Assembly (NCBI RefSeq): GCF_006345805.1
Contig: NC_042997.1
Span: forward strand, 116,312,001 to 116,376,000
DNA: 64,000 nucleotides
Origin: Octopus sinensis
Taxonomy: Eukaryota
Reading direction: 5' to 3'
Program-made: the position numbers and the translations under genes
Shown here: positions 7,340 through 53,400 of the stretch, in pieces
How positions within the stretch are numbered: the stretch's first letter is position 1
How the letters are laid out: every line of letters starts with the position of its first letter
The notes under the pieces: generated by a model
Databases searched by the model: none
Told to the model about the DNA's origin: nothing
Seen by the model: only the letters and a program-made list of their open reading frames with translations

Positions 7340-7347
7340 ACAGGTAA

Positions 7348-12772: not shown

Positions 12773-12817
<45 letters not shown>

Positions 12818-13072: not shown

Positions 13073-13114
<42 letters not shown>

Positions 13115-15339: not shown

Positions 15340-15401
15340 CGAGTTCTTAACTTCCTTCTTAAAATGTACGTTCTGGTACATTCTAGTGACGGACTTATGC
15401 C

Positions 15402-15634: not shown

Positions 15635-15727
15635 CTTATACCAACTATCCGTATACCAATACCCAGGTTGTTAATTTTCTTCATAAAAGATGTGTTGTGG
15701 TATATCCTGGGTACGGGTGTTACTGAG

Positions 15728-32691: not shown

Positions 32692-33078
32692 TAAGCACAA
32701 GGCCCGAAATTTTGGGGGAGGGGGCCAGTCGATAGATTGACCTCAGTGCGTAACTGGTACTTAGTTTATCGACCCCGAAAGGATGAAAGGTAAAGTCGAC
32801 TTCGGCAGGATTTCATCTTAGAATGTAAAGACAGACGAAATACCTATTTCTTTACTACCCACAAGGGGCTAAACACAGAGAGGACAAACAAGGACAGACA
32901 AACGGATTAAGTTGATTATATCGACCCCAGTGCGTAACTGATACTTAATTTATTGACCCTGAAATGATGAAAGGCAAAGTCGACCTCGGCGGAATTTGAA
33001 CTCAGAACGTAGCGGCAGACGAAATACCGCTAAGCATTCCGGCCGGTGTGCTAACGACTCTGCCAGCTCGTCACCTTA
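32692..33078 (-). mobile_element. Family-A SINE dimer: long-tail unit plus short-tail host
   Basis: Junction gacgaaatacc|tatttctttactaccc at 32844/32845. The last unit ends in the gcacaaggcc-type tail. Confidence 0.88.
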
Positions 33079-33694
33079 ACGTATATTAGAAATTGAAAAT
33101 CTTAACAGCAGAAAAAAAATATAATGTTGCACAGACTGTACTCATTAGAAAAGGTCCTACATATTGAAATATTGCTCATTTTAGTTAATAAAAAGAATTT
33201 TAAAAGATTCTTCTCTGTAAATGGGAAAGAAATAACGAAACAGAATACTTCCTAACTATTATTATAAGAAATAAATATATATTTCTCTCTCTCTATGTCT
33301 GTCTGGTTAGCAGGTACTTACGGCTATTTCCTCGAGCTAAATATTTCTTATCTTCTCCAATTTACGCAAACTAGGAAACCATATTCTACTACATTGATGA
33401 TTTGAAGAAGATTTTCGATAGATCTTGGAACTGATTTTTAAAAGCTGTTCCGTAGCGAACTTCAAAAATAATCAATATTCGAGATTGGATGTGGCAACAA
33501 AAGTACTTCCTCCAGAAGATAATTGTCCTGAAGCGGTGGCTTATTGAAGAGGTTGTAAGTTCTGAGTGGCTTGGAACTCACACAATCAAGATGTATGATA
33601 TATATATGCCTGCGACTTCAGAATACTTCTCTCTGTGTGGAAGTAATTTCTTTGTAATACCACAGATATATTGGGAGCTTGAAAGGTTTCTGCT

Positions 33695-33802
33695 CATGTG
33701 CAAGTACACACGCACGCACACATACACACACACACATACACATACAAGTACACACACACATATATATATTTACATACACACATGTATGTGTGTCTGTATA
33801 TG

Positions 33803-33845
<43 letters not shown>

Positions 33846-33902
33846 ATATATGCACACACATATATACACATGCATATAATATATATATATATATATATAC
33901 AT

Positions 33903-33942
<40 letters not shown>

Positions 33943-33978
33943 ACAAACATATATACATATACATATATATGCACACAA

Positions 33979-34009
<31 letters not shown>

Positions 34010-34545
34010 CCTATATACGTGTATATGTATGTATGTATGTATATTGATAGACAACATGCAAACGTAATTTACATAAACACACTGCATTATTTTACATATA
34101 TATATGCCCATATATGCATATACATGCAAATATATATGTGTGTATGTGTGAGTATATATTGATATATATATATATATAATAATATATATATAATATATAT
34201 ATATATATACACATAAATATATATGTATGCATATATATATATATATATTACACACACATATATGTAAACATTCATATATATATATATATAATATATATAT
34301 TATATATATTATATATATATATTATTCACATATATGTATGCTATATATGATACATAATGTATGCATAAATAGATATATACATACATATTTACGTCTGCAT
34401 ACAGACCCCTTCACACACACACACACCAACACATAATATATATATATATATATATCTATATATATATATATATATATATTATACATACATACATACATAC
34501 TACATACATACATACATACATACATACATACATACATACATACAA
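33695..34545 (+). repeat. Long compound (TA)n/(CA)n/(CATA)n tract
   Basis: Seen directly. Confidence 0.95.
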
Positions 34546-35092
34546 CCGTCCGTACACGTACGTACAGCAGTACTCAGAATTCTCAGTAGATTCGAGGAGA
34601 AAGAAAAAATCTCCCTGATATCCCATCCTCCCCTTCCCACAAATTCTTACAACATTGTCGTCACTTGATACAAGTTTTATTTCATATTTTGAAAGAGCTT
34701 TCAAGTTACGTAACTCAATGATGACTTTTTTCTTTAACTCAACAACGACCACACCATGCACAATAAAATTCAAACTTCAATCGACAACAAGACTTTCTGT
34801 CGACAGCTATTCTGTAATTTTGTCATATTTTATCATCTACACATCTACTTATTTATCTACGCATTCATCTTTGTCTTTTCTTTTTTCTTCGCTTCTATAT
34901 AGTCGTTAGTTATTGTATTTTCCAGCGTTGAGGAAAGGCCGATTTTTTACCTTTTTCCTTTCGTAAAATTAATTCAGAAAAATCTTTCTGCGCTTTCTGG
35001 TAGATGGCTGCTATATTTTTTGTATGACAATTTTAATCCCAGACAAAGATAGAAAGAATACCTTTATCAAACTTACTGTATCTTCTTATATG

Positions 35093-35230
35093 CAATATTC
35101 CCTCGACTATCGCGGGTGTTACGTTCCAAACCCTGCCCCGTGATAGGTGAAAATCTACGAAGTAGAAGTCCTGTCTTGTCCCTTTATGTAATCATGCGTG
35201 TCAGCCCTTGTGGCCAATAAAAAAGAATTG

Positions 35231-35280
<50 letters not shown>

Positions 35281-35282
35281 CA

Positions 35283-35323
<41 letters not shown>

Positions 35324-35432
35324 TGTATATATTTATTTTATTAATAGATGCAAAACAACACCACGGAAGAATCGGGGTAAGCTTAAATAATAAACCGCGA
35401 TAGGTGAACCGCGATATGGCGAGGTATTACTG
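35093..35432. mobile_element. Tigger/pogo-like non-autonomous element containing a (TAT)n tract
   Basis: TIR-like ends caatattccctcgactatcgcgg / ccgcgatatggcgaggtattactg, followed by TA. Confidence 0.6.
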
Positions 35433-35462
35433 TACACACACAGACACACAGACACACACACA

Positions 35463-35505
<43 letters not shown>

Positions 35506-36515
35506 ACACACACACATACATATATACATATATGTACTTATAAACAAGAGCAAAAGAAAAAATTCAAATGCTAAATATGCCGAAAATAGACTTAATCGTC
35601 AATAAGCATATAATTTATCACTATAAGCATGCGTCTCGAAAGCAAGCCGATAGAAATTTCTAAAAACTTTCGTTATTATCGGATCGGTCCCAATTTCTGA
35701 GTTAATTCATTTAGAATTTTCTCGTCATCAGCAATAAATACGATAAGAAAATAAATGAGATACTTACTTGTACCCATGGAAGAAGTAAATACTAAGTCAT
35801 GAGCACACTTAAGTACCCCAAATATATCCAAAATAGAAATTCCACAGCATACCTCGAGACACGTGTGATCGGACTGAAAATTCTCATAGAGTGAGAGAGT
35901 CCGGAAGTGAATAGTATTAAATTTACATCTAATATAGGATAAAATTTTCGAAAAAATTTATCTATGGCCAGCATATTAAAAATTACCTTTAAAGGTTAAA
36001 TTTATAAACAACTTATAAACAATGTTTTGGTATGTTTGTCATCTTAAGTCCTGTTCCAACCTGCTATTAAGTAATTTGTGTCTCGATGTAAAGATTTGGT
36101 ACATTTCTTCTATACATAACTCACAGTTATTTCCTCCTGATCGATACGGCTTAGCTGTACTAATTATCTCGCATTTCGTGGTAAAGCTATGGTTCCCACC
36201 TTAAAGGGACCAGATTAGTTAGCTTCGGGTCACGCTGTTCATTTTACTTTTATCTCTAAATGAATTTAAATGATTAGCAAGTCCTTTTTAAAGAAAATTA
36301 GCGGGCTAGTTCCTATATAGAAGTATGTCCTTCTCTGCATCTATACACTATGTTATTCCTCAAGTATTTAGAGTTTAAGGGGCATACTTTATTCTTAGCA
36401 CAATTACAGAGCCCTAAATCCTTGTTTCTATTATCAGCAACTATTTTGTTTTACTGCTCGCCAGGTATTTGTTCTTATGTCGATATATATACCATTGGGA
36501 TTTTCTAAATGGTTG

Positions 36516-36554
<39 letters not shown>

Positions 36555-37132
36555 TATTTTATTCATTTTAGTCACTGGACTGTGATCATGCTGGGATACT
36601 GATTTGAAGGGGTTAGTCGAACAAATCGACCCAGAACTTTTTCAAGCTTGTCACATATGATATCGTATTCTTATGACGTGTCGCTAGATTACGGGGATGT
36701 AAACAAAACAACACCGGTTACCAAATGTGGCTGGGGACAGAAGTAAACACAAACACAACGACACACACATAGACAGACACACACACATGTATATGTGAGC
36801 ATGCATATGTATTCTTTTATTATTATATTACTTGTTTCAGTCATTAAGATTGTAGCCATGCTGGAGCACCAATTTGAAGAATTTTAGTCGAAAGAATCAT
36901 CTCCAGTGCTTATTTTTAAAGCCTAGTACTTATTCTGTTGGTCTGACGAGGTTCTTTTAGTTTCCGTCAACCAAATCCAACACAAGGAACTGGTCGGCCA
37001 GGGGCCATAGCAGTAGAAGACACTTGCCCAAGGTTCCACACTGTGAGGCTGAATCTGAAACCCTGTCACTGGGAAGCAAATTTCTTCTCTATACACCCAC
37101 ACCTATGCGCGCGCACGCACGTACACACATAT

Positions 37133-37714
37133 AGGTTTCAAATTTTGGCACAAGGCCAGCAATTTTGGGGGAAGGAGCTAAGTCGATTAGATCGACCCCA
37201 GGGCTTGACTGGTCTTATTTTATCGAACCACGAAAGGATGAGAGGCAAAGTCGACCTCGGTGAGGTTTGAACTTAGAACGTAAAGACGGACGAAATACCT
37301 ATTTCTTTACTACCCACAAGGGGCTAAACACAGAGAGGACAAACAATGACAGACAAACGGATTAAGTCGATTACATCGACCCCAGTGCGTAACTGGTACT
37401 TATTTTATCGACCCCGAAAGGATGAAAGGCAAAGTCAACCTCGGCGGAATTTGAACTCACAACGTAACAGCAGACGAAATGCCTATTTCTTTACTACCCA
37501 CAAGGGGCTAAACACAGAGAGGACAAACAATGACAGACAAACGGATTAAGTCGACTATATCGACCCCAGTGCGTAACTGGTACTTATTTAATCGAGCCCG
37601 AGAAGATGAAAGGCAAAGTCGGCCTCGGCTGAATTTGAACTCAGAACGTAACGGCAGACGAAATACCGCAAAGCACTTCGTCCAGCGTGCTAACGTTTTT
37701 GCCAGCTCGCTGCC
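37133..37714 (-). mobile_element. Family-A SINE trimer: two long-tail units plus short-tail host
   Basis: Junctions at 37299/37300 and 37483/37484, both at the GG(T/C)ATTTCGTC site. Confidence 0.88.
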
Positions 37715-37739
37715 TTACACGTACACACATATACACGCA

Positions 37740-37960
37740 CATAGAGGGAGAGTGAAAAAGAGAGAACGATACATATGCGCATACACACACACATATGTAT
37801 GTATGTATGTATTTATGTATTTATGTATGTATGTATGTATGTATGTATGTATGTATGTATGTATGTATGTATGTATGTATGTATGCGTGTGCATGTGTGT
37901 GTGCATGTGTGTATCGTTCGCTCTTTCCCGCTCTCTCTCTCCCTCTGTGTATACATACAT

Positions 37961-37993
<33 letters not shown>

Positions 37994-38463
37994 TAAATAT
38001 ATGTATGTGTGTATGTATACATTCATACACATACACACACATATATATATATATATGTGTGTATGTGTGGTGTGTGTGTGTATGTATATGTATGTATGTA
38101 TGTATGTATGCATGTTTGTATGCATGTTTGTATGTATGTATGTATGTATGTATGTATGTATACACATTTATAGGCATTGACACCAATTCAACTATAAATA
38201 CCAGCATAATTTTATTTTTAAATGGTTTCATCTAAATTTTAAATATCCATGCGTAGACATGAATACATTTTGTTTGTATTATTTCTTTTTTATCGAATTA
38301 ACAAAGAAAAACGTGGATATCCATAAATACTCTGTTGTATACAATAAAATCTCTTCTCAGATAGAAACGTCCATTGTGGAACTCTGTCTGTCTGTCTGTC
38401 TCTCTTAGCCTCTCTCTTTCTCTCTCTCTCTTTGTCTATATATATAGTGAGAGATAGATAGAT

Positions 38464-38529
<66 letters not shown>

Positions 38530-38661
38530 AAAGAGAGAGGGGGAAGAGATAGAGAGATAGAGTGACAGACAGATAGAAAGATAGACAGATAGAAAGATAG
38601 ATAGATAGACAGACAGACAGATAGATATATTTATCTAGATCTTTCTTACATATGTGTTTGT

Positions 38662-38701
<40 letters not shown>

Positions 38702-38720
38702 ATGCGTGCGTGCGTGTGCA
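37740..38720 (+). repeat. Compound (TATG)n, (GATA)n, (GA)n and (TG)n microsatellites
   Basis: Seen directly. Confidence 0.9.
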
Positions 38721-39312
38721 TCTAAGTCCATCTACCTATCAATCTGTCTGGCTCTTTATTAATTTATCAACGCGTGCGTACACACACACACACACACCTT
38801 TCTACTATTCCACTAAATAAAAACGCAATATTGAAGCATTAAGTATGACTTTTACATTTTGTTTAACGTGAAAATAAGACACACACACACATACACACAC
38901 TTGATGTTGGCTGTAAATTTTTCCGTGCAATACAACGCATTCCTGTTCACAACAGTTTCTTCAAAATCGATCCAAGCTTGAATCAGTGAATTTAAACACG
39001 AATGATACTTCGGGCAATTTGCTGTTTCGTGCTTCTCAGATGTTATCTGTATGTCCTATCGTTTATTAACTACCTTATCCAGTCTTGAAAATAATTATCG
39101 ATCCTTTACACGTTTCCTTCAGTTATTGGATGTCTTTCTCGATTACTTTGCAATGCCTGATCCGATGCAAATATTTGCTTTCCTTCTGTGAAAACGACCA
39201 ATTCTTACTGGTCTTCAGTAACAAGAAACAGCTTCTCAGAGGAAATAAAAACCCAGTAATTCTCAGTGTTATACAATTCCGTCTAAAGTGGACAATAATT
39301 GAAACTTGTTTT

Positions 39313-39712
39313 GACGGCGAGCTGGCAGACACGTTAGCGCGCCGGGTGAAATGCTTAGCGGTATTTCGTCTGCCGTTACGTTGTGAGTTCAAATTCCGCC
39401 GAGGTCGACTTTGCCTTTCATCCTTTCGGGCTCGATAAATTAAGTACCAGTTACGCACTGGGGTCGATGTAATCGACTTAATACCTATGTCTGTCCTTGT
39501 TTGTCCCCTCAATGTTTAGCCCCTTGTGGGTAATAAAGAAATAGGTATTTCGCCTGCCGATACGTTCTGAATTCAAATTCCGCCGTGTTTGACTTTGCCT
39601 TTCATCCTTTCGGAGTCGATAAAATAAGTACCAGTTAGTATTGGGATCGATGTAATCGACTCGCATCCTCCCGCGAAATTTCAGGCCGTGTGCCTTTATT
39701 AGAAGGGGGTTT
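39313..39712 (+). mobile_element. Family-A SINE dimer: long-tail unit plus short-tail host
   Basis: Junction aataaagaaata|ggtatttcgcctgccg at 39543/39544. The second unit ends aaatttcaggccgtgtgcc. Confidence 0.88.
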
Positions 39713-39959
39713 ATATTTTGCATAAATTAGTCCAGAAAGGGAGGTGCTTATGCGATTTGAAACTCCAACATCCCTAGAATAATGTGTCGGCTGATGCTCA
39801 ACTTGAACGCTTAAATCAATGTCTGATGAATAAATGTGCAGCAAGCAAAAAGCCAGAAATCTCTTCCCGAATTCTTGCAATAAAGGTGATTCCACAAAAG
39901 GCATTCAAAGACTAGATGTTGTTGTTGTTGTTATTTATAACTCGGTCAACCTTTAGCTG

Positions 39960-40282
39960 TGAAGGCGCGTGGCTTAGTCGTTATAGTATTCGGCTCACAA
40001 CCATAAGATCATGAGTTCGATTTTCGGCGGTGCGTTGTCCTTGAGAATGACACTTTATTTCACGTTGCTTCTATCCACTCAGCAGGCAAAAATGAGTTGT
40101 ACTTGTAATTCTAAGGGGCCAGTCTTATCACACTATGTGTCACACTGAATCTCCCCGAGAACTACGTTAAGGGTACACATGTCTGTGGAGTGCTCAGCCA
40201 CTTGCACGCTAATTTCACGAGAAGGCAGTTCCGTTGATCGAGCCAACTGGAACACTCATCGTCGATAACCGACGGAGTACCA
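39960..40282 (+). mobile_element. Family-E-related SINE with a different tail
   Basis: aggcgcgtggcttagtcgtt..gagttcgatt..cactttatttcacgttgct. Related copies at about 50330-50560 (+) and 57080-57345 (-). Confidence 0.7.
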
Positions 40283-40847
40283 ATAACCCTTAGTAAAAAG
40301 ACCTGTTATTAAGACGTTCCAGCCGTAACTATCCTGGCCGTCATTTTTTCTTTTCAACTATCGTGTATTCTGGACTATATTAGCCAATGTATTCTTTCCA
40401 AGACTGTAGAGTTTGATTTCTATGAATTTAGCTGCTATTAGTAGCAAGTCGGGTGACCAAGTAAAGGCTCTCTTAGAACATGTCCTCGCACGTGGCTCGA
40501 ACCATATTTCTATTCTATTCTGTCGTGAAGGTTTTAAACTGGAAAGCGTGATACAGCTACCATTGTTATATAATTTTTTATATTTATGCGCCCTTTTCAA
40601 GCCTAGCCAGGCTCATGGGCCCGGTTTCCCGGTTTCTGTGGCGTATGTGTTCCCCACCAGCAGCTGGACGGGACGCCAGTCCATCGCAGCGTTACTCAAG
40701 AAACAGGAAGAAAGATTGAGAGAAAGTTGGGGCGAAAGAGTACAACAGGGGTCGCCACCATCCCCTGCCGGAGCCTCGTGGAGCTTTTAGGTGTTTTCGC
40801 TCAATAAACACATACAATGCTCGGTCTAGGAATCTCGTGAAATTACC

Positions 40848-41071
40848 TATTTCTTTATTACCCACAAGGGGCTAAACATAGAGGGGACAAACAAGGACAG
40901 ACATAGGTATTAAGTCGATTACATCGACCCCAGTGCATAACTGGTACTTAATTTATCGACCCCGAAAGGATGAAAGGCAAAGTCGACCTCGGCGGAATTT
41001 GAACTCACAACGTAACGCAGACGAAATACCGCTAAGCATTTCGCCCGGCGTGCTAACGTGTCTGCCAGCTC
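40848..41071 (-). mobile_element. Family-A long-tail SINE inserted into the head of a family-D SINE
   Basis: It interrupts the family-D head (ggcgcaatggcccagtgg...). tacc (GGTA on the element strand) is duplicated at 40844-40847 and 41072-41075. Confidence 0.8.
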
Positions 41072-41871
41072 TACCGTGATCCTCTGGCCGTGAGTCTGCT
41101 GCCCTAACCACTGGGCCATTGCGCCTCTTCATTGTTATATAAGAAATTTTAAAGGTTGTATTCGTAACTACAGCAACGAAAATTGCTTGTCTACAATTTT
41201 CTTATGTTTTTCCTACTCAGCTATAGAAAAAAAATGTAGTTCCACAGTACTTGGTTGGAGAATGCTGGTTAAATATAGAATTCAAACGTGGAATATTCTA
41301 GATATTAATTTGAAATAATCCACATAAATGTGTTTGGGAAAATGTATATCAATAACTCAATTAGATGGATAATTTTGTTGTAGAAATGTTAAGGAAAATG
41401 CAGGTGAATATTTTTGAGCTCGTGTCAAAGTAATTTGCTTTGAAAAGTGAAATGTGAGCAAGCAGATGAATGGACATAATTAAAGTTAGTTAAGCATGCG
41501 CAAATTTCCTACTGAGGCTATGCCAAGGTAAAAGTCAACTTCTTTGAAAAGAGAGCGAAATGCGACCAAAATAACTATTGACACACATTTGCTGCCAAGA
41601 GAAATAATCAGAGTTTCAGAGGGTCGGTGGGAGAGAGGGAGAGAGAGTTGCCTGCGCCGATTGAATACTGTCAAGTGAGAAAATAAAAGAGATTAGATTT
41701 ATTGTAGTTGTATAGAGAAATTAGCTCCTCATACTATTAGTCAAAGGTGCTAATTTCCATTTGTTTCCAAAATAATACACATGACAGAGGTAAACTAAAA
41801 TGTCGACATTTGATATAGGATCAGTGTAGAGACATTAACCCTTAATGTCTATCGCAAATTTGATATTTAAT

Positions 41872-42516
41872 CTTTTATTCTTTTACTTGTTTCAGTCATT
41901 TGACTACGGCCATGCTGGAGCACTGCCTTTTTTAGTTGAGCAAATCGACCCCAGGACTTATTCTTTGTAAGCCTAGTACTTATTCTATCTGTCTATTTTG
42001 CTGAACCGCTAAGTTACGGGGACATAAACACACCAGCATCGGTTGTCAAGCGATGTTAGGGGAGAAACACAGACACACAGACACACACACATATATATAT
42101 TTCTTTATTGCCCACAAGGGGCTAAACATAGAGGGGACAAACAAAGACAGACAAACGGATTAAGTCGATTACATCAACTCCAGTGCGTAACTGGTACTTT
42201 ATTTATCGACCCCGAAAGGATGAAAGGCAAAGTCGACCTCGGTGGAATTTGAACTCAGAACGTAACGGCAGACAAAATACGGCTGCGCATTTCGCTCGGC
42301 GTGCTAACGTTTCTGCCAGCTCGCCGCCTTAACACACACACACACACACACACACACATATGTATATATATATATACATATATACGACGGGTTTCTTTCA
42401 GTTTCCGTCTACCAAATCTACTCACAACGCTTTGGTCGGCCCGTGACATGCAGTGGGACTGAAACCGGAACCATGTGGTTGGTAAGCAAGCTATTTACCA
42501 CACAGCCACTCCTGCG
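41872..42516 (-). mobile_element. Family-B SINE interrupted by a family-A SINE
   Basis: Tail half 41872-42085 and head half 42385-42516. Confidence 0.8.
42097..42330 (-). mobile_element. Family-A long-tail SINE inserted in the microsatellite middle of a family-B SINE
   Basis: Complete unit; both flanks are (CA)n-CATAT. Confidence 0.85.
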
Positions 42517-42721
42517 CTTCCTGTAGATGCTTCTTTAGAGTTGAACAGAATTTCCGATATTATTTGCTAAATACGTGCACACACATACACACACATGTAT
42601 GTATGTATGTATGTATGTATGTATGTATGCATGTATGCATGTATGTATGTATGTATGTATGTATGTATGTATGTATGTATGTATGTGGTTCGTATGTATG
42701 CATGCTTGTTTGTATGTATTC

Positions 42722-43553: not shown

Positions 43554-43629
43554 TTGCAATGATATCATTATTCCGAATATGCCTGATGCACGTTCGAAAT
43601 GGGAAACAAGCTACTCATCACTGCTCTAC

Positions 43630-44886
43630 GCAATGCATTTAATGTTTAGACAAAGGTTTCCGATTTTCATTTAATATCGGATCGCTTCACTTTCACAATT
43701 TACATAAAAACACAAACGCTACGATCTACCCACTTATCCACATCACCTTTCCTATCTAAAGAACAGTAAATTGTTGTTTCAAAATTGATTCGTCTCGAAT
43801 TATATTTCTGTGAAGTGGTCAGCGTTAGGAAGGGCATTCGACCGCAAAAACCATGCCAAAGCTAACACTTGAGTTCATCGCAGTTCTGCGGCTCGTCGAG
43901 TCCTGTCAAACCGTCCAGCCCATGCCAGCATGGAAAAGGGACGTAAAATGATGCGTTTGAATAACACCTTTGTTTTATTGGAATCCTGCTCCAACGCTGA
44001 GGGGTGATTGGCAAAATTCACCTCAGCAGGATTCGAACTCGGAACATAAAGTGGCTGAACAAATCTTGTCTGTACTGCAATATAATTCATACTCACCTTG
44101 GTTACATTTCTTGAAGGCTTCAGTAAGAACAATAGAAAAGAGTTAACTACCAGGTGTTACAGCTTTCTCCAAATCACTGGATTAATTTAATGAAAATGAC
44201 CAAGCAATAAGTGCGATTCTTACCACCAAGAGCAATGCACAAAACCGCCCTTTGCAGAAAAATCTAAAAGAGGCACAGAAGAGACAAGTAAACAATGAGT
44301 TTAAGCAAGCCAAGGCTAATGCAGAACGCACTCTGCAGAAAATGCCTGGTAGTTAACCCTTTTCTTTTGTTCTTACTGAAGCCTTCAAGAACTGTAACCA
44401 AGGTATGTATGTGTTATATCGCAGTACAGGCAAGATTTTTTCAGGCACTTGATGTTTTGAGTTCGAATCCTGCTGAGGTCAGTTTTGCCAGTCATCCCTC
44501 AGAGTTGGAGCGGTGTTCCAATAAAACAAAGGTGTCAGTCAAACGCGAGAAACAAATCTGTTTCACCATCATCATTTAACGTCCATTTTCCATGCTGGAC
44601 GGTTTGACAGAATCCGACGAGCCACAGAACTACGATGAACTCAAGCGTTAGCTTTGTCATGGTTTTTCCGTTCGAATGCCCTTCCTAACGCTGATCACTT
44701 CACAGAAATATAATTCGAGACGAATCAATTTTGCAACAACAATTTACTGTTCTTTACATACGAAAGGTGATGTGGATAAGTGGATAGATTGTAGCGTTTG
44801 AGTTTTCTATATAAATCGTGTAAGTGAATTGATCCGACATTAAATGAAAATCGGAAACCTTTGTCTAAACATTAAATACATCGCAC
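43630..44886. repeat. Inverted duplication: about 525-540-bp arms (43630-44155 / 44344-44886), roughly 88-90% identical by eye
   Basis: gtttagacaaaggtttccgattttcattt.. is mirrored by ..aaatgaaaatcggaaacctttgtctaaac. Both arms contain the same retroposon fragments. Confidence 0.92.
44156..44343 (+). mobile_element. Continuation of the same RTE ORF, forming the spacer of the inverted duplication
   Basis: TAFSKSLD*FNENDQAISAILTTK resembles RTE DWFDEND and follows on from RDVIVT at 43553. tgttaca is duplicated at 43547-43553 and 44155-44161. Confidence 0.65.
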
Positions 44887-45692
44887 TATTTTGTCGATTT
44901 AATTTAATGACCCCTACCCACAAATATTTTTGATCTTGTTCCTTTGTTAGAAGCAAGTATTTTGCTTTCTGGAGACCCGACTTAGAACTGCAGGATTACC
45001 TGCGGGAGGTATATTGCCTGGTCGGGGAGGAAAGGTAAGAGGCCTTAGTGCCTCGATTTGAAATTTGAATTAGTTATTTTTTGGTAAGAGGCTCAGCGCC
45101 TCAACTTGTAAGGACAATTGCGTCCATTCTTTGAACTTTGGTAAGAGGTTCAATACCTCATTTTGTGTTGTTGAGAAAAAGAGAACAATGTTTTCAGGAA
45201 GCAGCAATCGGCGGGCATTGTCTGCTTCCCTCACCAACCATCTTTTCATTTCATTATCATTTGTGTCTTTGTCCAGCCCGCAGCTGCATCTTTGTAAGGT
45301 TGTATGGCCAATTTATGAAATAAAGTATTGTTACGTAATAGCTGTAAGTAAAGACCATTTTCAGAAGAAAAGGTTTGACAACGAACACAGGAACTTTTTA
45401 AAATCCTTCTTACAGTCAGAGATTTTTTAAATGTTAAACACTGATGCAATTTTGCATGTTGATAGTGAAAACCACATTAATTTTCTCCGGAAATCAATCA
45501 TAAAACTGTTTCATGCCCTTCCGATTAGCTAAAATTTGAAATTATAGTTAATCGGAAGTTTCCTTCTTTACCAACATGCATAGACCCCCAAACTCATAAT
45601 TTATTCTAATTTATTAAAACGTGTTATATTCATTAATATCGGTAAAACACATTTTGTAAATCTATTTTATTTACTTTTCTTTTTCTTCGCAG

Positions 45693-46198
45693 GTATTACC
45701 TTCGGCAATGAACATATCGTCTTCCTTATTATCGGTTGTATGGTGCTCTTTTTCATGGTGTGTCTTCCAATTGACTTCTACAACTACCACAAAAAGCGAA
45801 AAGATAAAAAGGATCGACAAGGGTCCAGTATGGTTTACTCTCGAACAGGTCCCAGGCCATTTCATGTAATTGTCAACCAAGAATCAAACACGGAAGAGGC
45901 GCACCAAACGCGACACACGAAAACACGACGTCCCTTTTTCAAGTTTATGGGTCTCGTGGCGCTGCTTAAAAAGAAGCCGACTTCAGGCGACGATCAAGTC
46001 GACAGTATTGTGGACGACGGAGTAACACCATCAACATCAACGAAGTCGATGAGTGTGTCGACGATGTATTGTAACAGTGTAGGACTATCTGCTGATTCGA
46101 TGAGTCCAGCGGAACATATCGAACTGCCAGAGTTACCGTACGACAACGCAAGGAAACCGAAAGAACTTTATAATTTTGTGGACGAAGAAAATTCTTGA
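45693..46198 (+). CDS. Terminal coding exon of a probable single-pass (type I) membrane protein: TM helix, basic stop-transfer, about 135-aa cytoplasmic tail
   Basis: Strong acceptor ttacttttctttttcttcgcag at 45692 (phase 1). The frame reads (G)ITFGNEH-IVFLIIGCMVLFFMVCLPIDFY-NYHKKRKDKK...ELYNFVDEENS*. High-complexity, repeat-free sequence followed by a long AT-rich UTR-like tract. Upstream exons not identified. Confidence 0.72.
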
Positions 46199-47300
46199 TT
46201 ACTTTTGCTAAAATCGAATATCTAAGTGATAAAAATCCGGAATACGAGATTTTGTCGGCAAAAATTAATCCATAGAAGAATTAATAGAAGATTTCTGGAA
46301 GTTGATTTGCCGGGAAACAAAAAAAAAATAAATAAATAATCGAACTTGTTGTGTTCTCCTCCGAATATCTAAATGCTTTCTTGTTGCAAATGCTGCATGA
46401 GACGGAAGTGACGTATAATGAGGCTTTAACAGTTTGCATAGTTCTAATATATTAAAATAATTGGATTTATATGTTTTATAAAAGAAAAAAAAGAACACTT
46501 CCGGTTTTATGCTAACACTTTATGCCAAGTTGCCCCCAAATGGGAAAATATAGGATTGGTTTAATTGACAATTTCCGACCGAAATTATTTTAAATTTTGA
46601 ACTATTTTATAAAATATATGATTCTTCATTTTTACTCTCGGAAAAAAAAAAAAAAATAATAATAATCGATGAATAAAAATAAGCATAATTACAAAAAAGA
46701 AAAAATGAGAGTAAAAATAAACATCTGCATATAACTATTTTCGAGTGGAATATCCGGAAAATAGAAATAATCGATGCATGTCAATAACGGTAATTATAAA
46801 AACGTAATCTTCAAGCTGGGTTTAAAAGCTATGACGAGGGTTAAAGTTAAGAAGAGGTGGTGAGATTTTTATCAACTTGAAATCATTTCTATTTTAATTA
46901 CTGAAACATCCGTAGAGAAGTTTTGTATAGAAAAGTGTTTTGTACGACTGAAATTATTTTAATTGAGTTAAAATGAACAGTAACCTAATTTGTTTGAATT
47001 CTGCTTGGTATATTAACGCTTAAATAATTTAAATATTTCTTAAGAAAACATGTGCCGGAAGTATTGTTAATGTCGGTAAACCAATTGCGTAAAATGACGG
47101 GAAATTAAATGAAAAAAAAACATGAATATTTATTAAATTATTGATTTTTAAGAAGAAAAAAAATTAAAATACATGTAAGAGAAATGTGTTGTAAGATTTT
47201 AAATGTTAAAATAAATTATTGTTTGTTACAAAAGAACACGAAATGGCTGTTTTATTAAAATAAGAAATACGTAAAAACATTGAATCTCGACGAATCGATT
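46199..47300 (+). other. Probable 3'UTR with candidate poly(A) signals
   Basis: SINE-free, very AT-rich. AATAAA at 46672-46677 and 46716-46721. The true end is unknown. Confidence 0.45.
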
Positions 47301-47617
47301 TTGCAAAAACAACTTTTTTCCTTTACATACGAAATGTGAAATTAAAAATAGTGGCGGATGATAAAATATAGGGACTACATCTTATCTCCCACCATCACAT
47401 TTGCGTAAGTGAAGAGATCTTGTTTTAACTGAAAATCGAAAACTGGATTTGTGTAAGAAATACTTCGCAACTCTTTTTGTTGTCCAACGATTCCGGGTTC
47501 CAATCCTCTAAATGTAGAAATCTTCGTTGACAAGTTGACAAAAGGAAATAGAGTTTTAGTCTTAGAATCTGGTTTGCATCTTCGATGCTTTTATAGGAAT
47601 ATTAAATTCCGCAGTTT

Positions 47618-47820
47618 GGCGGCGAGCTAACCGAATCGTTACTGCGCCGTGCATAAAATGCTCAACGGCATTTCATCCGTCTTTATTTTCTAAGTTCAAA
47701 TGCCGCCGAGGTCAACTTTGCTTTTTATCCGTTTGGAATCGATAAAATAAGTAGGTTAAGCATTGGTGCTGATGTAATCGATCCAGCCCCTCCCTCAAAA
47801 TTGCTGGCCTTGTGTCAAAT
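47618..47820 (+). mobile_element. Older family-A SINE (short-tail form)
   Basis: ggcggcgagct...agttcaaatgccgccgaggtcaactttgc...aaaattgctggccttgtg. Confidence 0.75.
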
Positions 47821-48249
47821 ATGGTTGCGGTGGAGGATAAAAGATCATTAGAGGTGTAATATTATGCATTTATAAAGGTTGTGGTAGTTGCAGTTGTGTG
47901 TGTTTACTGAGAAAGAAGGGTGGAACGAAGCTAAATTGCTTTATTCTTATTGAAAGATGCACTTCCGGTTCTAGTTTTGTTCATAGAATTACAAAATATC
48001 TGCTGTGTTGGATATCGTCTTTGATTCCGTTACATATGAGAAACAGAATGTTACTGACGGAAGAAGAGTTGTATGAACTGTGAAGATGTGTTTTAATTAA
48101 AAGTAAATTTAAGGTTATTGGTTTAAGAATAATAATTGAACATTTATTGATGGAAGATCCACTACTGAAAGTAAATTCAAAACTATTAAATTAAATTCAG
48201 TTATAAAATTGGGATTTTCATGTCCACCGGGCGGTATATTTAATGATTT

Positions 48250-48460
48250 CGAATTTTGACACAAGGCCAGCAATTTTAGGGGTGGAGCAAGTCGGTTACA
48301 TCAACCCCAGTGCTCCACTGATACTTATGTCAGCGACCCCCGAGAAGATGAAAAGTAAAATCGGCCTCGACGGAATTTGAACTCAGATCGTAAAGACGGA
48401 CGAAATGCTGCTAAACGTTTTGTCCGGCACATTAACGATTCTGCCCGCTCGCTGACTTGG
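48250..48460 (-). mobile_element. Older family-A SINE (short-tail form)
   Basis: Reverse complement of the same head, core and tail. Confidence 0.72.
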
Positions 48461-48686
48461 CCGTATATTTAATAACAAGCCGTCATAAGAAACTGATTTT
48501 AATAAATGTAATTTAATTAAAAGCAATAATGATAATCAGAACATTAATGTACAGAAGTGGGTTGAGGCAACTTAATCCTGAAGTGCAATGGTGTTGATGG
48601 AACCTGGGACCGAGAGATTTTAATAATGGAAGGCAAGGTTTACGATATTGGAAGAATATCATCTCCTTCCATCATCTTGTTCTTTA

Positions 48687-49501
48687 TGTAGTTGAGGCTT
48701 CCGGCAGGCGAAGAAAAAAGTCTTCAAGTACAACTGCTATTTACAACTGATTTATTTACAGGAAAAGGTGAAGTGTGCTGCTCTCAGCTACCATCTTAAG
48801 CACCGATAGTGTGGGCGCATTGCCTCTGGAGATAGACAGGCAGAAAAGCTCTGCCAGTGGTGGTGATCAGCCATTGCTGCTGAGTAGTGGCGCCGAAGAA
48901 GAGAGGTCTGAATCGGTTTACCCTTTATATAGTTTTTTTTTTCCATCGCGAGCCTCGTTGTGATCTCATGCATGGCAAATGGATGCAGGTGAGGTCTCGC
49001 TCCTGTCGCGGTCAATTCAACTCCGGACGTGGGCTGGTGAATTACTTCGCTGCCCATTTGTCCAGCAAGATCCGTCTGGAGAAGAGGAGCCTGCAGCAAA
49101 GAGGCTTTTCGAAAAAGATGGACGACAGTGGTAAGAAAGATGAGAATGTACGAGGCTGTGCTTGCACGGTCGTTCGGAATATAAAAGAAAGGAAAAAGAT
49201 TACCAAAAAGGGATAACCAACCGGCGGGTTAACTCACTAACCCGGACCCAAAACTCATCCGATCATCATCTACATTTATATTTTTAACCCTCATTCACAA
49301 TATATGTAAACCCATCCGGTTTTTCACACTGTATGTAAGAAGCGAGTTTGTACCTTGAATGTCCCTTGTCTGTCCTTGTAATGTCCCCTCTATGTAAAAC
49401 CCTTATAGGTTAATAAAGAAATATCTCGCTCTAGTTTCGGAGATGGCAATGGCTGCCGCGAGATCTCATCCAATATGGCGCTGGCTGCTTGTGCCGCTAC
49501 A
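48687..49501 (-). mobile_element. Putative solo LTR, interrupted by copy A
   Basis: TGTAG...CTACA termini. On the minus strand, CTATATAAA (48932-48924) precedes AATAAA (48756-48751). About 390 bp without the insert. No TSD, PBS or PPT found. Confidence 0.35.
49003..49423 (+). mobile_element. 421-bp Tx1-derived 3' element, copy A
   Basis: Encodes NYFAAHLSSKIRLEKRSL, similar to the LINE ORF2 end FHLKRKLWLEKRCL. Tail ..aataaagaaata. 8-bp TSD tctcgctc at 48995-49002 and 49424-49431. Confidence 0.82.
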
Positions 49502-49864
49502 AGATCATGTCGACATATTCTGAAGCAGCGATGCCTGATAAGTAAAGGGTGACGGAGTCCGTTGATGTACATCTCTGCTTGGAAATCCTTGAACTAGACA
49601 TGGCTGAAAGTTTCACTGATGTTAGATACATAAAAATATTACCATTTTTTAAAGCAATTTCCAGGATTAGCAACTATTGGTTAAAATTTGATAAATGCCG
49701 CGAAACGGTGGTAAAAGTGTTCAGTTGTAAAAGCGATACCAGGAATATTGTGAGATGTTGTTGTTGCAGTTGTTGTTATCTTCACCCACTTCAGCCCCTC
49801 ATCGAGAAGACACGATTTATGATTAAAAGTATTCAAATTGTAACCAACCCGACTTTTATTGGTA

Positions 49865-50179
49865 CTACTAGCGAACAGTGGTCCCGGTGCGCGCACTCGC
49901 ACATCCGCGCTAGCTAGTCGTAAGCAGTCGATCCTACAACGACTTTTTAACCCTAACCCTAAACCTAATTTTTAAACCCTAAACCTAACCCCAACCTTAG
50001 TTTGTTTTAAAAAAATAATTTACTTTGCGTTTTATTTACTTTGTTCGAAAAATATTATTTAATTTTCTTTAATATGTATTCAGCCTTGAAATACAAACAT
50101 ACGCGCAAGTCGATGTAGGATAGACTACTTACTACTAGCTAGCGCGAGTGCGCGCACCAGGACCACTGTTCGCTAGTAG
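49865..50179. mobile_element. MITE-like element with about 80-bp inverted arms and an internal degenerate CCCTAA tract
   Basis: ctactagcgaacagtggtcc.. pairs with ..ggaccactgttcgctagtag. TA on both flanks. aaccctaaccctaaacct at 49949-49997. Confidence 0.72.
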
Positions 50180-50579
50180 TACAACTTTTCTTCAGGCAAT
50201 TATCCTCATTTAAAGACGATAGGACGGGTGCTGTTTTAGAGAGAACAAAAGGCTATTTCTAGCAGGTCGAGAAACAACGCAACGGCTTTCTTGTTGGTTC
50301 GTTTTTAAAGTTGCCTACAACATCTAGGTGAAGGCGCGTGACCAGGTGGTTAGGGTGATATTCACGATCGTAAGATCACAGTTTCGATTTCCAGACCGAG
50401 CAATGCGTTATGTTCTTGAGCAAAACACTTCACTTCACGTTCCTCCAGTCCACTCAGATGTAAATGAGTGACCCTACAATGGACCGATGTCCTGTTTAGG
50501 AGGCGTGATGTGATCTCGGTTACTTATACGTCATGGGAACCAGATAACCAGCCTGGTGAGTCCTAGGGATCAACAGAGA

Positions 50580-51000
50580 TATTTCTTTATTTGCCTATAA
50601 AAAGGTTTACATAGAGGGGACATTACAAGGACGGACAAGGGACATTTAGGGTACAAACACGCTTGTTATATACACTATAAAAAAAAACGAATGGATTTAC
50701 ATATATTTTGCGGATGGGAGTTAAAAATATAAATGATGGTTAGATGAAATTTGGGTCCGGGTTAGTGAATTAACCCGCCGGTTGGTTATCCCTATTGGTA
50801 ATCTTTTTCCTTTCTTTTATGCTCTGACCGACCGTGCAAGCACAGCCTCGTGCATTCTCATCTTTCTTACCACTGTCGTCCATCTTTTTCGAAAATCCTC
50901 TTTGCAGCAGGCTCCTCTTTTCCAGACGGATCTTGCTGGATAGATGGGCAGCGAAGTAATTCACCAGCCCACGTCCGGAGATGAATTGACTTGTCGCAAT
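50580..51000 (-). mobile_element. 421-bp Tx1-derived 3' element, copy B (inverted relative to A)
   Basis: Reverse-complement homolog of 49003-49423. 17-bp TSD ctagggatcaacagaga at 50563-50579 and 51001-51017. Confidence 0.88.
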
Positions 51001-51395
51001 CTAGGGATCAACAGAGAGCACACACACACACAGCATCCTTGTTGCTCAAGCATCACCTTTTTTAAGTACTTTCTAGGATCTTCTAGTCCTTTACCCAGAA
51101 GTGACTTGCTGACCTTGCTTGGATTGACTTCGTGTAAGAAAAAATGTTTCCACGTTGTTTAACGTCGATAATTGGGTGACAACCAGCGTTTTCATTGTGA
51201 TATAAAAATATTTCTATTCAAGTAAACTGAATATAGATGTTTCCGAGAGACAGATGGAATTTAATAAAAAAAATTACAAAAGCTGCAAAGTAATTGTATG
51301 AATACAATGTATTAACGTACAACGTTAGCTTACATGAAATGTTGAACATAACGAGGTTAAAGAGCGGCTGATTATTAAAGGAATAAAACGATATA

Positions 51396-51812
51396 TATTT
51401 CTTTATTGCTCACAAGGGGCTAAACATAGAGGGGACAAATAAGAACAGACAAACGGACCAAGCCGATTACATCGACTTCAATGCGTAACTGGTACTTAAT
51501 TTATCGACCCCGAAAGGATGAAAGGCAAAGTCGACCTCGGCGGAATTTGAACTCAGAACGTAACGGCAGACAAAATACTTATTTCTTTACTACCCACATG
51601 GGGCTAAACACAGAGAAGACAAACAAGGACAGACATAGGTATTAAGTCGATTACATCGACCCCAGTGCGTAACTGGTACTTAATTTATCGACCCCGAAAG
51701 GATGAAAGGCAAAGTCGACCTCGGCGGAATTTGAACTCAGAACGTAGCGGCAGACGAAATACCGATAAGAATTTCGCCCGGCGTGCTAACGCTTCTGCCA
51801 GCTCGCCGCCTA
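51396..51812 (-). mobile_element. Family-A long-tail SINE dimer with 14-bp TSD
   Basis: aataaaacgatata at 51382-51395 and 51813-51826. Internal junction at the standard site near 51579. Confidence 0.9.
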
Positions 51813-52724
51813 AATAAAACGATATACGGAAGGAAAGTGGTTTACTTTGGTATAAGTGTGAGAAGTTGACAAGGGAAAGCACTCAGAAGAGAAAAAGTCT
51901 AAGACCAATGAAGACATACGAAGTGTGTTGTTTGGCTTTTCTTTGATTTAACTTTGCAGCACACCTAATACATCTTCACCAATAAAACCAAACTGACAAC
52001 ACGAATGAGACAAGCAGACGGTATGTTTTGATTAAATTTTTAGTTACACGAGACATCTTACAAACAAGGGTGAGAAATAAATAGTCATGATGTGACTGTT
52101 GTAGTTCGACTACTTGTCCTTGTTTTATTAGAACAAATACATAAACCGAAACAGATTCATATAATTATTATATTGCATAAAACAATTAGACATAGCGCCT
52201 GAATGTCTGTTTGCCTTCACCAACAAACCTATTCACTATCTAGTTCACTATTCTACTGTTTATTTAAGAGAACTTTGACTTTCTTCATAACTTGAATATA
52301 TTCGTTAAGGTCTCTCTATTGCCATTAGATAATTAAGGTATCTTAAAGTGACTTTATTATAAGTAAAAGCATTCTTTAAAAAATGTATTGTGACAATATT
52401 GAAATTCATCTTTCTTATTATTTTTTATAATATTGTGTGAGGCACTCGTCTGAATAATTCCATGAGATGAAAAGCGTTAACAACGATATAGAAAATGAAT
52501 GAGTTATTTAATGGGCTATTGTAGAGGGTGGTCTAAAAGTTTTGTTACTCACTACTAGAAAGTAATGAGAGCAATAGAAAAACAAGTAATGCAGTATCCC
52601 AAAGCACGAACTGGGTTTAGTTTATTCACTTTCATTGACGCTGTCACATTTGTATGAACACCGTCATTTTCGTGGCACATAATAATGCAGCACCATGTTC
52701 TGTGTGATATTTTTCGAAGACGGA

Positions 52725-53400
52725 GAGCTGACAGAAACGTTAGAACGCCGGGCGAAATGCTAATACGGTATTTCGCCTGTTTTTGCGTTCTGAGTTCAAA
52801 TTCCGCCGAGGTCGACTTTGCCTTTCATCCTTTCGGGGTCGATAAATTAAGCACCAGTTACGCACTAGGGTCGATATAATCGACTTAATCCATTTGTCTG
52901 TCCTTGTTTGTCCTCTCTGTGTTTAGCCCCTTGTGGGTAGTAAAGAAATAGGTATTTCGTCTGTCTTTACGTAGTGAGTTCAAATTCCTCTGAGGTCGAC
53001 TTTGCCTTTCATCCTTTTCGGATCGATTAAATAAGTACCAGTTACATACTGGAGTCGATATAATCGACTTAATCCGTTTGTCTGTCCTTGTTTGTCCTCT
53101 CTGTGTGTAGCCCCTTTTGGGCAGTAAAGAAAAAAGAAACGTTAGCACGCCGGGCAAAATGCTTAGCGATATTTCGTCTGTCTTTACATTCTGAGTTCAA
53201 ATTCCGCCGAGGTCGACTTTGCCTTTCATCCTTTCGGGGTTGATTAAATAAGTACTAGTTACACACTGGGATCGATATAATCAACTTAATCCGTTTGTCT
53301 GTCCTTGTTTGTCCCCTCTGTGTGCAGTAAAGAAATAAGAAACGTTTGTATGCCGGGCGAAATTCTTAGCGATATTTCGTCTGTCTTTGCAAAATGTTTG
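52725..53400 (+). mobile_element. Family-A SINE array: three tailed units plus a terminal partial head, inside a Tc1/mariner remnant
   Basis: Junctions at 52951 (ggtatttcg site) and at 53135 and 53338 (agaaacg site). Confidence 0.85.

What the first reader, a model, noticed from the sequence alone, without database searches (positions are those of the whole stretch)
32692..53400. Family-A SINE arrays built by repeated entry at one nucleotide, with tail swapping and possible promoter rescue
Seen: seven tail-to-body junctions re-enter the SINE at the same position as the LINE (after ttagc, before GGTATTTCG): 11145, 32844, 37299, 37483, 39543, 51579 and 52951. In the arrays at 32.7k, 37.1k and 39.3k the last unit has the other, short tail, while the inner units have the Tx1-type tail. 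No extra head sequence lies between units. Inference: long-tail RNA is reverse-transcribed into a resident SINE head and joins seamlessly through homology. This would turn a resident short-tail copy into an intact A-box + B-box + Tx1-tail unit. Truncated cDNAs would regain a Pol III promoter, and one subfamily would convert another.
Basis: partly seen in the sequence, partly recalled or inferred. Interest (0 to 1): 0.8.

Follow-up and report, generated by a model that had tools for sequence, protein, structure and literature searches.

The report
Self-targeting SINE builds 184-bp arrays
In this cephalopod-like genome, a short retrotransposon and its parent LINE insert again and again at one exact nucleotide inside older copies of the same short element, stacking them head-to-tail; this is a clean new example of a known behaviour, target-site-specific retrotransposition, not a new mechanism.

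Summary
At all seven listed coordinates a complete long tail (...GTAAAGAAATA) abuts GGTATTTCG, and every inner unit is exactly 184 bp.

A 5.3-kb LINE with the same tail sits at the same nucleotide, flanked by its own 16-bp target-site duplication. The LINE has an endonuclease, a reverse transcriptase and a zf-RVT domain, and it is L1/Tx1-like.

The arrays are nested insertions, not local duplications:
- Units within an array are no more alike than dispersed copies.
- The short-tail end units are far older than the adjacent long-tail units (71-74% against 90-96% mutual identity).
- The array heads are old, so they belong to the resident copy.
- One array carries the resident's diagnostic 20-mer at the start of every unit.
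- Four arrays have a single duplication flanking the whole array.

Long-tail insertions outside SINEs also start at GGTAT-like sequence, so the specificity belongs to the LINE machinery.

"Promoter rescue" and subfamily conversion are untested. The units contain no Pol III terminator, and no dispersed chimeric copies are seen.

The closest known cases are the Tx1-Mar/SINEU-3 tandem insertions and the single-nucleotide Alu-in-Alu hotspot. No genome-wide test was possible.

The parts
5579..5593 (+). Outer 15-bp TSD GGTATTCATGAACTG, upstream copy. It flanks the whole 10.9k composite.
   Evidence: The second copy is at 11329-11343.
5594..5644 (+). Resident SINE head. It is 5'-truncated and starts at GCAGAAACG. 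It is followed by the upstream copy of the LINE's 16-bp TSD, CGTATTTCGTCTGCCG (5629-5644).
   Evidence: The TSD shares the uncommon C at position 1 with its downstream copy.
5646..10960 (+). LINE, L1/Tx1-like. The ORF1 remnant is at 6298-6962 and carries a decayed CCHC knuckle. ORF2 is split over three frames: 7348-9060 (endonuclease), 8822-9448 (reverse transcriptase) and 9648-10613 (zf-RVT). The 3' end is ...GGGCAATAAAGAAATT.
   Evidence: The tail is shared with the long-tail SINE.
10961..11328 (+). Two long-tail SINE units of 184 bp each (10961-11144 and 11145-11328). The first 16 nt are the downstream copy of the LINE TSD.
11329..11343 (+). Outer 15-bp TSD, downstream copy.
32692..33077 (-). 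32.7k array. It consists of an old head (33029-33077), long-tail unit u1 (32845-33028) and a short-tail resident unit (about 32692-32844).
   Evidence: The head is 14% diverged against 3.8% for u1.
37118..37733 (-). 37.1k array. It consists of a head (37668-37716), long-tail units 37484-37667 and 37300-37483, and a short-tail resident unit 37136-37299. It is flanked by the 16-bp TSD TATATGTGTGTACGTG (37718-37733 and 37118-37133).
39313..39700 (+). 39.3k array. It consists of a head (39313-39359), long-tail unit 39360-39543 and a short-tail resident unit from 39544 to about 39700.
40848..41071 (-). Stand-alone long-tail SINE. Its target starts GGTAATTTC.
42098..42330 (-). Stand-alone long-tail SINE in a TA/TG microsatellite. 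Its tail is the closest match to the LINE tail.
51382..51826 (-). 51.4k array. It consists of a head (51764-51812) and long-tail units 51580-51763 and 51396-51579, which belong to two different sub-types. It is flanked by the 14-bp TSD TATATCGTTTTATT.
52709..53434 (+). 52.7k array. It consists of a head (52720-52766), u1 52767-52950, u2 52951-53134, a partial head 53135-53167, u3 53168-53337, a partial head 53338-53370 and a deleted short-tail resident u4 53371-53423. It is flanked by the 11-bp TSD ATTTTTCGAAG. Every unit starts with the resident's short-tail-type 20-mer.
15394..15642 (-). Stand-alone long-tail SINE outside the finding's range, with TSD GGTATAAG / GGCATAAG. It was used as a reference for the element's ends.

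Best explanation
A LINE of the L1/Tx1 group and the 'long-tail' SINE that shares its 3' end insert by target-primed reverse transcription. The first nick has a strong sequence preference, cutting just 5' of GGTAT(T)TCG-like sequence. The best match in the genome lies inside this SINE family's own head region (TTAGC|GGTATTTCG), between the putative A and B boxes. New long-tail copies, and the LINE itself, therefore land repeatedly at that nucleotide of resident copies of either subfamily, always in the resident's orientation.

The second nick falls about 16-20 nt downstream. The freed top-strand end is itself SINE sequence, so it pairs with the homologous stretch of the incoming cDNA. The join is seamless, and the incoming head is discarded or never copied. 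Each event therefore adds exactly one 184-bp headless unit just behind the resident head.

Shown here: the site, the shared tail, the LINE's TSD, the age and identity relations, and the whole-array TSDs. Inferred: that the endonuclease, rather than RNA-target pairing, sets the preference; the details of the homologous 5' joining; and growth of arrays from the head end.
For: 1. Site use. 8 of 15 long-tail 3' ends are at body position 1, all in the resident's orientation, and each tail is complete to its last base as defined by TSD-flanked single copies.

2. The LINE. It lies at the same nucleotide with a perfect 16-bp TSD, CGTATTTCGTCTGCCG, that shares an uncommon C at position 1. The whole composite has a separate 15-bp outer TSD.

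3. Shared tail. The LINE and the long-tail SINE share about 35-60 nt at the 3' end. The LINE encodes Exo_endo_phos, RVT_1 and zf-RVT domains and is collinear with human L1 ORF2p.

4. Targets outside SINEs. The five targets start GGTATTCAT, GGCATAAGT, GGTAATTTC, TATATATGT and TATATCGTT. GGYA occurs in 3 of 5 (p=1.6e-6), and summed similarity to the site gives p=2.7e-4.

5. Not a local duplication. Within-array identity is 0.77-0.935 against a between-locus median of 0.90. The two units at 51.4k belong to different sub-types.

6. Not a copied dimer. The short-tail end units are 71-74% identical to each other, while the adjacent long-tail units are 90-96% identical.

7. Old heads. Heads of arrays ending in a short-tail unit are 12.9% diverged from the long-tail head consensus, against 4.7% for the adjoining unit (p=7e-4). 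Stand-alone copies show no such gap.

8. Carry-over of resident sequence. In the 52.7k array the short-tail-type 20-mer (GTCTTTAC) starts every otherwise long-tail unit, as expected if target sequence is duplicated at each event.

9. Whole-array TSDs are present at 10.9k, 37.1k, 51.4k and 52.7k.

10. Age order. The upstream unit is less diverged than the downstream one in all three long-tail/long-tail arrays whose units are compared head-first (7<11, 8<15, 9<19).
Against: - The sample is a single 64-kb window. No genome-wide junction histogram and no empty-site alleles could be obtained.
- The 37.1k units u1 and u2 are each other's best match and share a private C>A change, so a local duplication cannot be excluded for that pair.
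- Two junctions in the 52.7k array use another position (tail|AGAAACGTT). These need either a second nick site used twice or a later duplication.
- The point where resident sequence switches to incoming sequence varies (before body position 10-14 in three arrays, about 20 in one, and a 16-nt TSD for the LINE), so there is no fixed TSD length.
- In the 39.3k array the head shares a GACACG variant with the most similar stand-alone copy, which hints that part of that head came from the incoming copy.
- Tx1-clade placement of the LINE was not shown by phylogeny.
- The age order (3 of 3) is not significant on its own.
Confidence: 0.8

Rival explanations
1. Local tandem duplication. A single SINE was multiplied in place by unequal crossing-over or replication slippage. 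The common junction reflects one recombination-prone spot.
For: Whole-array TSDs fit this model as well. The 37.1k units u1 and u2 share a private variant and are mutual best matches at 93.5%. The 52.7k units u2, u3 and u4 share a second junction type and several variants. Similar TSD1-(SINE)n-TSD1 arrays in a clam were ascribed to unequal recombination (PMC11481361).
Against: Units within arrays are no more alike than dispersed copies. The 51.4k units carry different sub-type blocks. Arrays combine young long-tail units with a much older short-tail unit and an old head. The left side of every junction is the exact 3' terminus of the element. The LINE sits at the same nucleotide with its own TSD.
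Confidence: 0.06
2. One-step multimers. Arrays were inserted as a block, either from Pol III read-through transcripts of an existing array or by the reverse transcriptase jumping from the 5' end of one SINE RNA to the 3' end of another.
For: There is no T>=4 run inside the units, so array transcripts are expected. The whole-array TSD at 51.4k fits a dimer insertion. End-to-end template jumping is a known property of non-LTR reverse transcriptases (established knowledge, not tested here).
Against: This cannot give arrays whose last unit and head are far older than the inner units. It cannot give the LINE's internal 16-bp TSD. It does not explain the GGTAT-like start of non-SINE targets. It would also need a fixed RNA 5' end at GGUAUUUCG, for which there is no evidence.
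Confidence: 0.1
3. A composite 'dimer' SINE family. The structure head + long-tail unit + short-tail unit would be one master element, mobilised through its short tail.
For: Three arrays (32.7k, 37.1k, 39.3k) share the order long-tail unit(s) followed by a short-tail unit.
Against: The two halves have very different ages: 71-74% against 90-96% mutual identity. The number of long-tail units varies between arrays (1, 2 and 1).
Confidence: 0.02

Closest known systems
Tx1-Mar LINEs and SINEU-3 in crocodilians (Kojima 2015, PMC4494074)
   Same: A Tx1-type LINE and a dependent SINE share a sequence-specific target. Tandem SINE copies arise by sequential insertion at the same site and 'sandwich' a TSD.
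   Different: There the target is an unrelated DNA transposon (Mariner-N4_AMi) and the TSD is visible between copies. Here the target lies inside the SINE's own head, so the duplicated target is SINE sequence. The join is seamless, the period is exact at 184 bp, and the incoming head is lost.
Single-nucleotide Alu-in-Alu insertion hotspot (Levy, Schwartz and Ast 2010, PMC2836564)
   Same: [quoted passage not shown]
   Different: That system is poly(A)/L1-driven with relaxed tail recognition. It has not been reported to yield headless units of exact period or to fuse a resident head to an incoming body.
Tx1L in Tx1D (Xenopus) and other target-specific Tx1-clade elements: Keno, Kibi, Koshi (as summarised in PMC4494074)
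   Same: A LINE with an AP-type endonuclease inserts at a defined sequence within another repeat or a microsatellite.
   Different: Those targets are DNA transposons, snRNA genes or microsatellites, not the LINE's own SINE partner.
TE tandem dimers by double insertion (McGurk and Barbash 2018, PMC5932611)
   Same: Insertion-site preference, not recombination, is proposed as the main source of head-to-tail TE dimers that can seed satellites (abstract).
   Different: That was a population survey in Drosophila, and the dimers are whole elements. Here the added unit is a defined sub-element.
TSD1-(SINE)n-TSD1 arrays in the clam S. broughtonii (PMC11481361)
   Same: The first unit has a full head, the inner units lack part of the head, and one TSD flanks the array.
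   Different: In the clam the inner units also have truncated tails, and the authors favour unequal recombination. Here every tail is complete and the unit ages differ.
Homology-assisted 5' joining of R2 (Eickbush 2000 and Fujimoto 2004, as cited in PMC4494074)
   Same: Target-homologous sequence on the incoming copy helps to form a precise 5' junction.
   Different: R2 uses a restriction-like endonuclease and 28S co-transcripts. For the present element this step is inferred from the sequence only.

Membership tests
Target-specific L1/Tx1-group LINE | ORF2 with an AP-type endonuclease, a reverse transcriptase and a C-terminal zinc-binding domain | tested here: met
   Pfam hits are Exo_endo_phos (E 5.8e-7), RVT_1 (1.7e-25) and zf-RVT (2.2e-8). 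The sequence is collinear with human L1 ORF2p residues 10-485 (E 4.6e-21). The copy has at least two frameshifts.
Target-specific L1/Tx1-group LINE | Placement of the reverse transcriptase inside the Tx1 clade by phylogeny with reference elements | not testable with these tools
   No named Tx1 references were reachable. The best relatives are unnamed: Argonauta hians hypothetical protein at 45%, and Patella and turtle proteins. L1-Tx1 families are reported as recently active in Octopus vulgaris (PMC13282606).
Target-specific L1/Tx1-group LINE | Insertion at a preferred target sequence with a TSD | tested here: met
   There is one LINE copy with a 16-bp TSD at TTAGC|CGTATTTCG, and 7 partner-SINE ends at the same site. 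Non-SINE targets are GGTAT-like. Only one LINE copy was available.
Stringent LINE-SINE partnership | The SINE 3' tail is homologous to the LINE 3' end | tested here: met
   LINE ...ATGTTTGGCCCCCGGTGGGCAATAAAGAAATT against SINE ...ATGTTTAGCCCCTTGTGGGCAATAAAGAAATA, 91% over 34 nt.
tRNA-derived SINE | The head is recognisable as a tRNA with internal A and B boxes | tested here: inconclusive
   ARAGORN and Rfam find no tRNA, even at E<=10 on a single copy. By eye, TGGCAGAAACG and GAGTTCAAATTCC resemble A and B boxes about 60 nt apart.
Sequential same-site insertion arrays (SINEU-3-like) | Each junction equals the exact element 3' end joined to the target site, in the same orientation, with target sequence duplicated at the 5' side of the insert | tested here: met
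   Searches cover the ends and orientation. Duplication is shown for the LINE (16 nt) and for the 52.7k array (short-tail-type 20-mer in every unit). In the other arrays the duplicated stretch carries no diagnostic variant.
Satellite-like array by unequal crossing-over | Units within an array are more alike than copies at other loci | tested here: not met
   Within-array identity is 0.77-0.935 (mean 0.86) against a between-locus median of 0.90. TRF reports 88-90% matches.
Dimeric SINE family (single master) | Both halves have the same age across copies | tested here: not met
   Short-tail halves are 71-74% identical and long-tail halves 90-96% identical among the same three arrays.

The most novel reading that the evidence does not exclude
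The self-targeting insertion may do more than stack copies. By fusing an old resident head (A box) to a fresh body and LINE-type tail, it may create new transcribable long-tail source genes out of dead short-tail copies. That would be DNA-level 'tail swapping' that lets one SINE lineage take over the loci and promoters of another. It would also seed exact 184-bp proto-satellites, and transcripts of LINEs or SINEs sitting in the site would carry target-homologous 3' read-through that reinforces the targeting.
Probability: 0.15. Interest if true: 0.7.

Novelty: new variant of a known kind. Interest (0 to 1): 0.45.

Why it matters
This case gives a mechanism for how SINE tandem arrays with an exact period can arise by retrotransposition alone. 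The key is that the preferred nick site of the partner LINE lies inside the SINE itself.

It offers an unusually clean natural record of target-primed reverse transcription and homology-guided 5' joining for an L1/Tx1-like element in a mollusc.

Practically, such arrays are likely to break assemblies. A 100-N gap in the window starts right at the site. They are also likely to be mis-annotated as satellites, as dimeric SINE families or as products of unequal crossing-over.

If the chimeric first units are transcribed and mobilised, this would be a new route of SINE subfamily turnover.

Tried and rejected
- Metagenome scan for more copies. It returned one chance bacterial match and one unrelated SINE that shares only the central domain, so it was no use for a junction histogram.
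- Protein searches with the LINE ORF2 pieces. The window's genome is not in the collections. Locus L003, fetched through a 53%-identical RT, belongs to another organism with no copy of this SINE.
- Argonauta hians locus L004. It holds a related LINE with a similar tail that abuts (TATC)n. The locus is a local duplication, so this is a single observation, and this SINE family is absent there.
- tRNA origin of the head. ARAGORN and Rfam were both negative.
- Dimer-master and unequal-crossover models were rejected on age and identity.
- Primer-template microhomology as the cause of the site was rejected. The start of the target (GGTATTTCG) is not similar to the RNA 3' end in the same sense. It is its reverse complement, which remains unexplained.
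- A second LINE copy in the window was sought by BLAST. None was found.


Full report
**What is there**

The window is eukaryotic. The best protein relative of its LINE is from the octopod Argonauta hians.

It holds about 30 units of one SINE family, built as follows:
- a head of about 49 nt, (A)AGGCGGCGAGCTGGCAGAAACGTTAGCACGCCGGGCGAAATGCTTAGC;
- a body of about 119 nt that starts GGTATTTCG;
- one of two tails. The 'long' tail is 65 nt and ends ...TTAGCCCCTTGTGGGTAGTAAAGAAATA. The 'short' tail reads ...CCCCCAAAATTGCTGGCCTTGTGCC....

**Check of the observation**

At 11145, 32844, 37299, 37483, 39543/4, 51579 and 52951 a complete long tail abuts GGTATTTCG with nothing in between. Every inner unit is exactly 184 bp. 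TRF finds period-184 arrays with 88-90% matches.

The arrays at 32.7k, 37.1k and 39.3k end in a short-tail unit. So does the one at 52.7k, where that unit carries a deletion.

There the tail is followed by a 33-nt partial head that starts at AGAAACGTT.

**The LINE**

Positions 5646-10960 (+) encode an AP-type endonuclease, a reverse transcriptase and a zf-RVT domain, spread over three frames. The N-terminal 570 residues are collinear with human L1 ORF2p. The ORF1 region holds a decayed CCHC knuckle. The last 35-60 nt match the SINE long tail, so the two are a tail-sharing pair.

The LINE lies inside a SINE. Upstream is a head followed by CGTATTTCGTCTGCCG, and the same 16-mer follows the LINE's last base. 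Both copies carry an uncommon C at position 1.

The whole composite is enclosed by a separate 15-bp TSD, GGTATTCATGAACTG. The composite is the partial head, the LINE and two SINE units.

This is a direct record of three successive events:
1. A SINE inserted at a GGTAT-like genomic site.
2. A second SINE inserted into its head.
3. The LINE inserted into the same head site.

**Nested insertion versus local duplication**

- Units of one array are not more alike than copies at other loci. Within-array identity is 0.77-0.935, and the between-locus median is 0.90. The two units at 51.4k belong to different long-tail sub-types (...AATACCTATG... against ...GGTCCGTTTG...).
- The short-tail end units of three arrays are only 71-74% identical to each other, while the long-tail units next to them are 90-96% identical. 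These arrays are therefore not copies of a dimer master, and the short-tail unit is much older.
- The heads of those arrays are 12.9% diverged from the long-tail head consensus, against 4.7% for the adjoining unit (p=7e-4). Stand-alone long-tail copies show 6.1% against 5.4%. The head belongs to the old resident, so the first unit is a chimera.
- In the 52.7k array, each otherwise long-tail unit starts with the short-tail-type 20-mer GGTATTTCGTCTGTCTTTAC. This is expected if the first about 20 nt of the resident are duplicated at each insertion.
- Whole-array TSDs are present at 10.9k (15 bp), 37.1k (16 bp), 51.4k (14 bp) and 52.7k (11 bp; the only two matches in the window).
- In the three arrays compared, the upstream unit is less diverged than the downstream one: 7<11, 8<15 and 9<19 differences.

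**Why one nucleotide**

There are 15 long-tail 3' ends in the window:

| Location of the 3' end | Count |
|---|---|
| Body position 1 (LINE included) | 8 |
| Head position 15 | 2 |
| Non-SINE DNA | 5 |

The five non-SINE targets begin GGTATTCAT, GGCATAAGT, GGTAATTTC, TATATATGT and TATATCGTT. GGYA in 3 of 5 has p=1.6e-6, and summed similarity to the site has p=2.7e-4.

The preference is therefore a property of the insertion machinery and not a by-product of homology. The SINE head simply holds the best site.

A related Argonauta LINE with a similar tail abuts a (TATC)n microsatellite. This fits the target-specific habit described for Tx1-clade elements (PMC4494074), but it is a single case.

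**Mechanism (inferred)**

The steps are:
1. The bottom strand is nicked at TTAGC|GGTATTTCG.
2. Reverse transcription starts from the tail.
3. The top strand is nicked about 16-20 nt downstream.
4. The freed top-strand 3' end is SINE sequence. It pairs with the matching stretch of the cDNA and primes second-strand synthesis there.

This makes a seamless joint and loses the incoming head.

The point where resident sequence changes to incoming sequence varies between arrays:

| Array or element | Switch point |
|---|---|
| 32.7k, 37.1k, 39.3k | before body position 10-14 |
| 52.7k | about position 20 |
| LINE | 16-nt TSD |

This variation fits homology-guided joining better than a fixed stagger.

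The structural outcome is real: an old head joined to a new body and a LINE-type tail. Its function was not shown.
- Consensus units contain no T>=4 run, so Pol III starting at an array head would read through all units into the flank.
- None of the five primary long-tail copies has an old-type head.
- Stand-alone copies are nearly full length, so 'truncated cDNA rescue' is not needed to explain the arrays.

**Comparison with known systems**

- Target-specific Tx1 LINEs with dependent SINEs, and tandem insertions that sandwich a TSD, are described for the crocodilian SINEU-3/Tx1-Mar pair (PMC4494074).
- A single-nucleotide hotspot for Alu insertion within Alu is described in PMC2836564.
- Insertion preference as the main source of TE dimers is described in PMC5932611.
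- Similar-looking clam arrays were put down to unequal recombination (PMC11481361).

The new element here is that the target lies inside the partner SINE's own head. This gives exact-period, seamless, headless units and fuses the resident head to the incoming body. I file it as a new variant of a known kind.

**Limits**

- The evidence comes from one 64-kb window and one LINE copy.
- There is no genome-wide or cross-species data.
- Tx1 clade membership is not resolved.
- The second junction type in the 52.7k array is not fully explained.
- The shared private variant in 37.1k units u1 and u2 is also not fully explained.

Noticed in passing
window 28747-28849 (- strand SINE head at 28850-28896): A 100-N assembly gap begins 3 nt after a SINE head that is cut at the same TTAGC|G site. 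SINE arrays at this site probably break the assembly.
   Followed up: partly
window 53134/53135 and 53337/53338: A second junction type: a complete long tail joined to head position 15 (AGAAACGTT), leaving a 33-nt partial head between units. This is either a secondary nick site used twice, with a TSD of about 53 nt, or one such event followed by a local duplication.
   Followed up: partly
window 49366-49423: A 5'-truncated tail fragment of a related LINE/SINE family (...CCCTTATAGGTTAATAAAGAAATA) in non-SINE DNA.
   Followed up: no
L004 18780-18920 (Argonauta hians, GCA_054771915.1): A LINE 45% identical in ORF2 ends ...GCCCTTGTGGCTAATAAAGAAACA and runs straight into a (TATC)n microsatellite. 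The locus contains a local duplication (12900-12960 equals 19000-19070).
   Followed up: partly
all long-tail junctions, e.g. window 11139-11152: The tail end GAAATA is the reverse complement of target positions 3-8 (TATTTC), so each junction GAAATA-GG-TATTTC is a near-palindrome. The significance is unknown.
   Followed up: no
window 10940-10960 and long-tail variants: The LINE tail and some SINE tails contain AATAAA (GCAATAAAGAAAT). A Pol II transcript of the LINE would then be cleaved within the flanking target sequence.
   Followed up: no
window 51575, 52780, 42277: C>T changes at or near the site (GGTATTTCG to GGTATTTTG; CCTGTTTTTGC) create T4-T5 runs. These would terminate Pol III just after the head in those copies.
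   Followed up: partly
window 380-620: A SINE copy with a third tail type (...GTAGCCCATATGTGCCTATAGTAGGAAGG) is embedded in an (ATT)n microsatellite.
   Followed up: no
window 12514-13221 and 33797-34542: Very long microsatellites: (TGA)n of about 236 copies and (TA)n of about 378 copies.
   Followed up: no
L002 6420-6613 (JGI metagenome contig Ga0066187_1002493): A different tRNA-headed SINE from another organism shares the central block GTCGACTTTGCCTTTCATCCTTTCGAGGTCGATAAA. The body therefore carries a widely conserved SINE core domain. The literature lists an octopus CORE-SINE, OR2 (PMC4758252).
   Followed up: no
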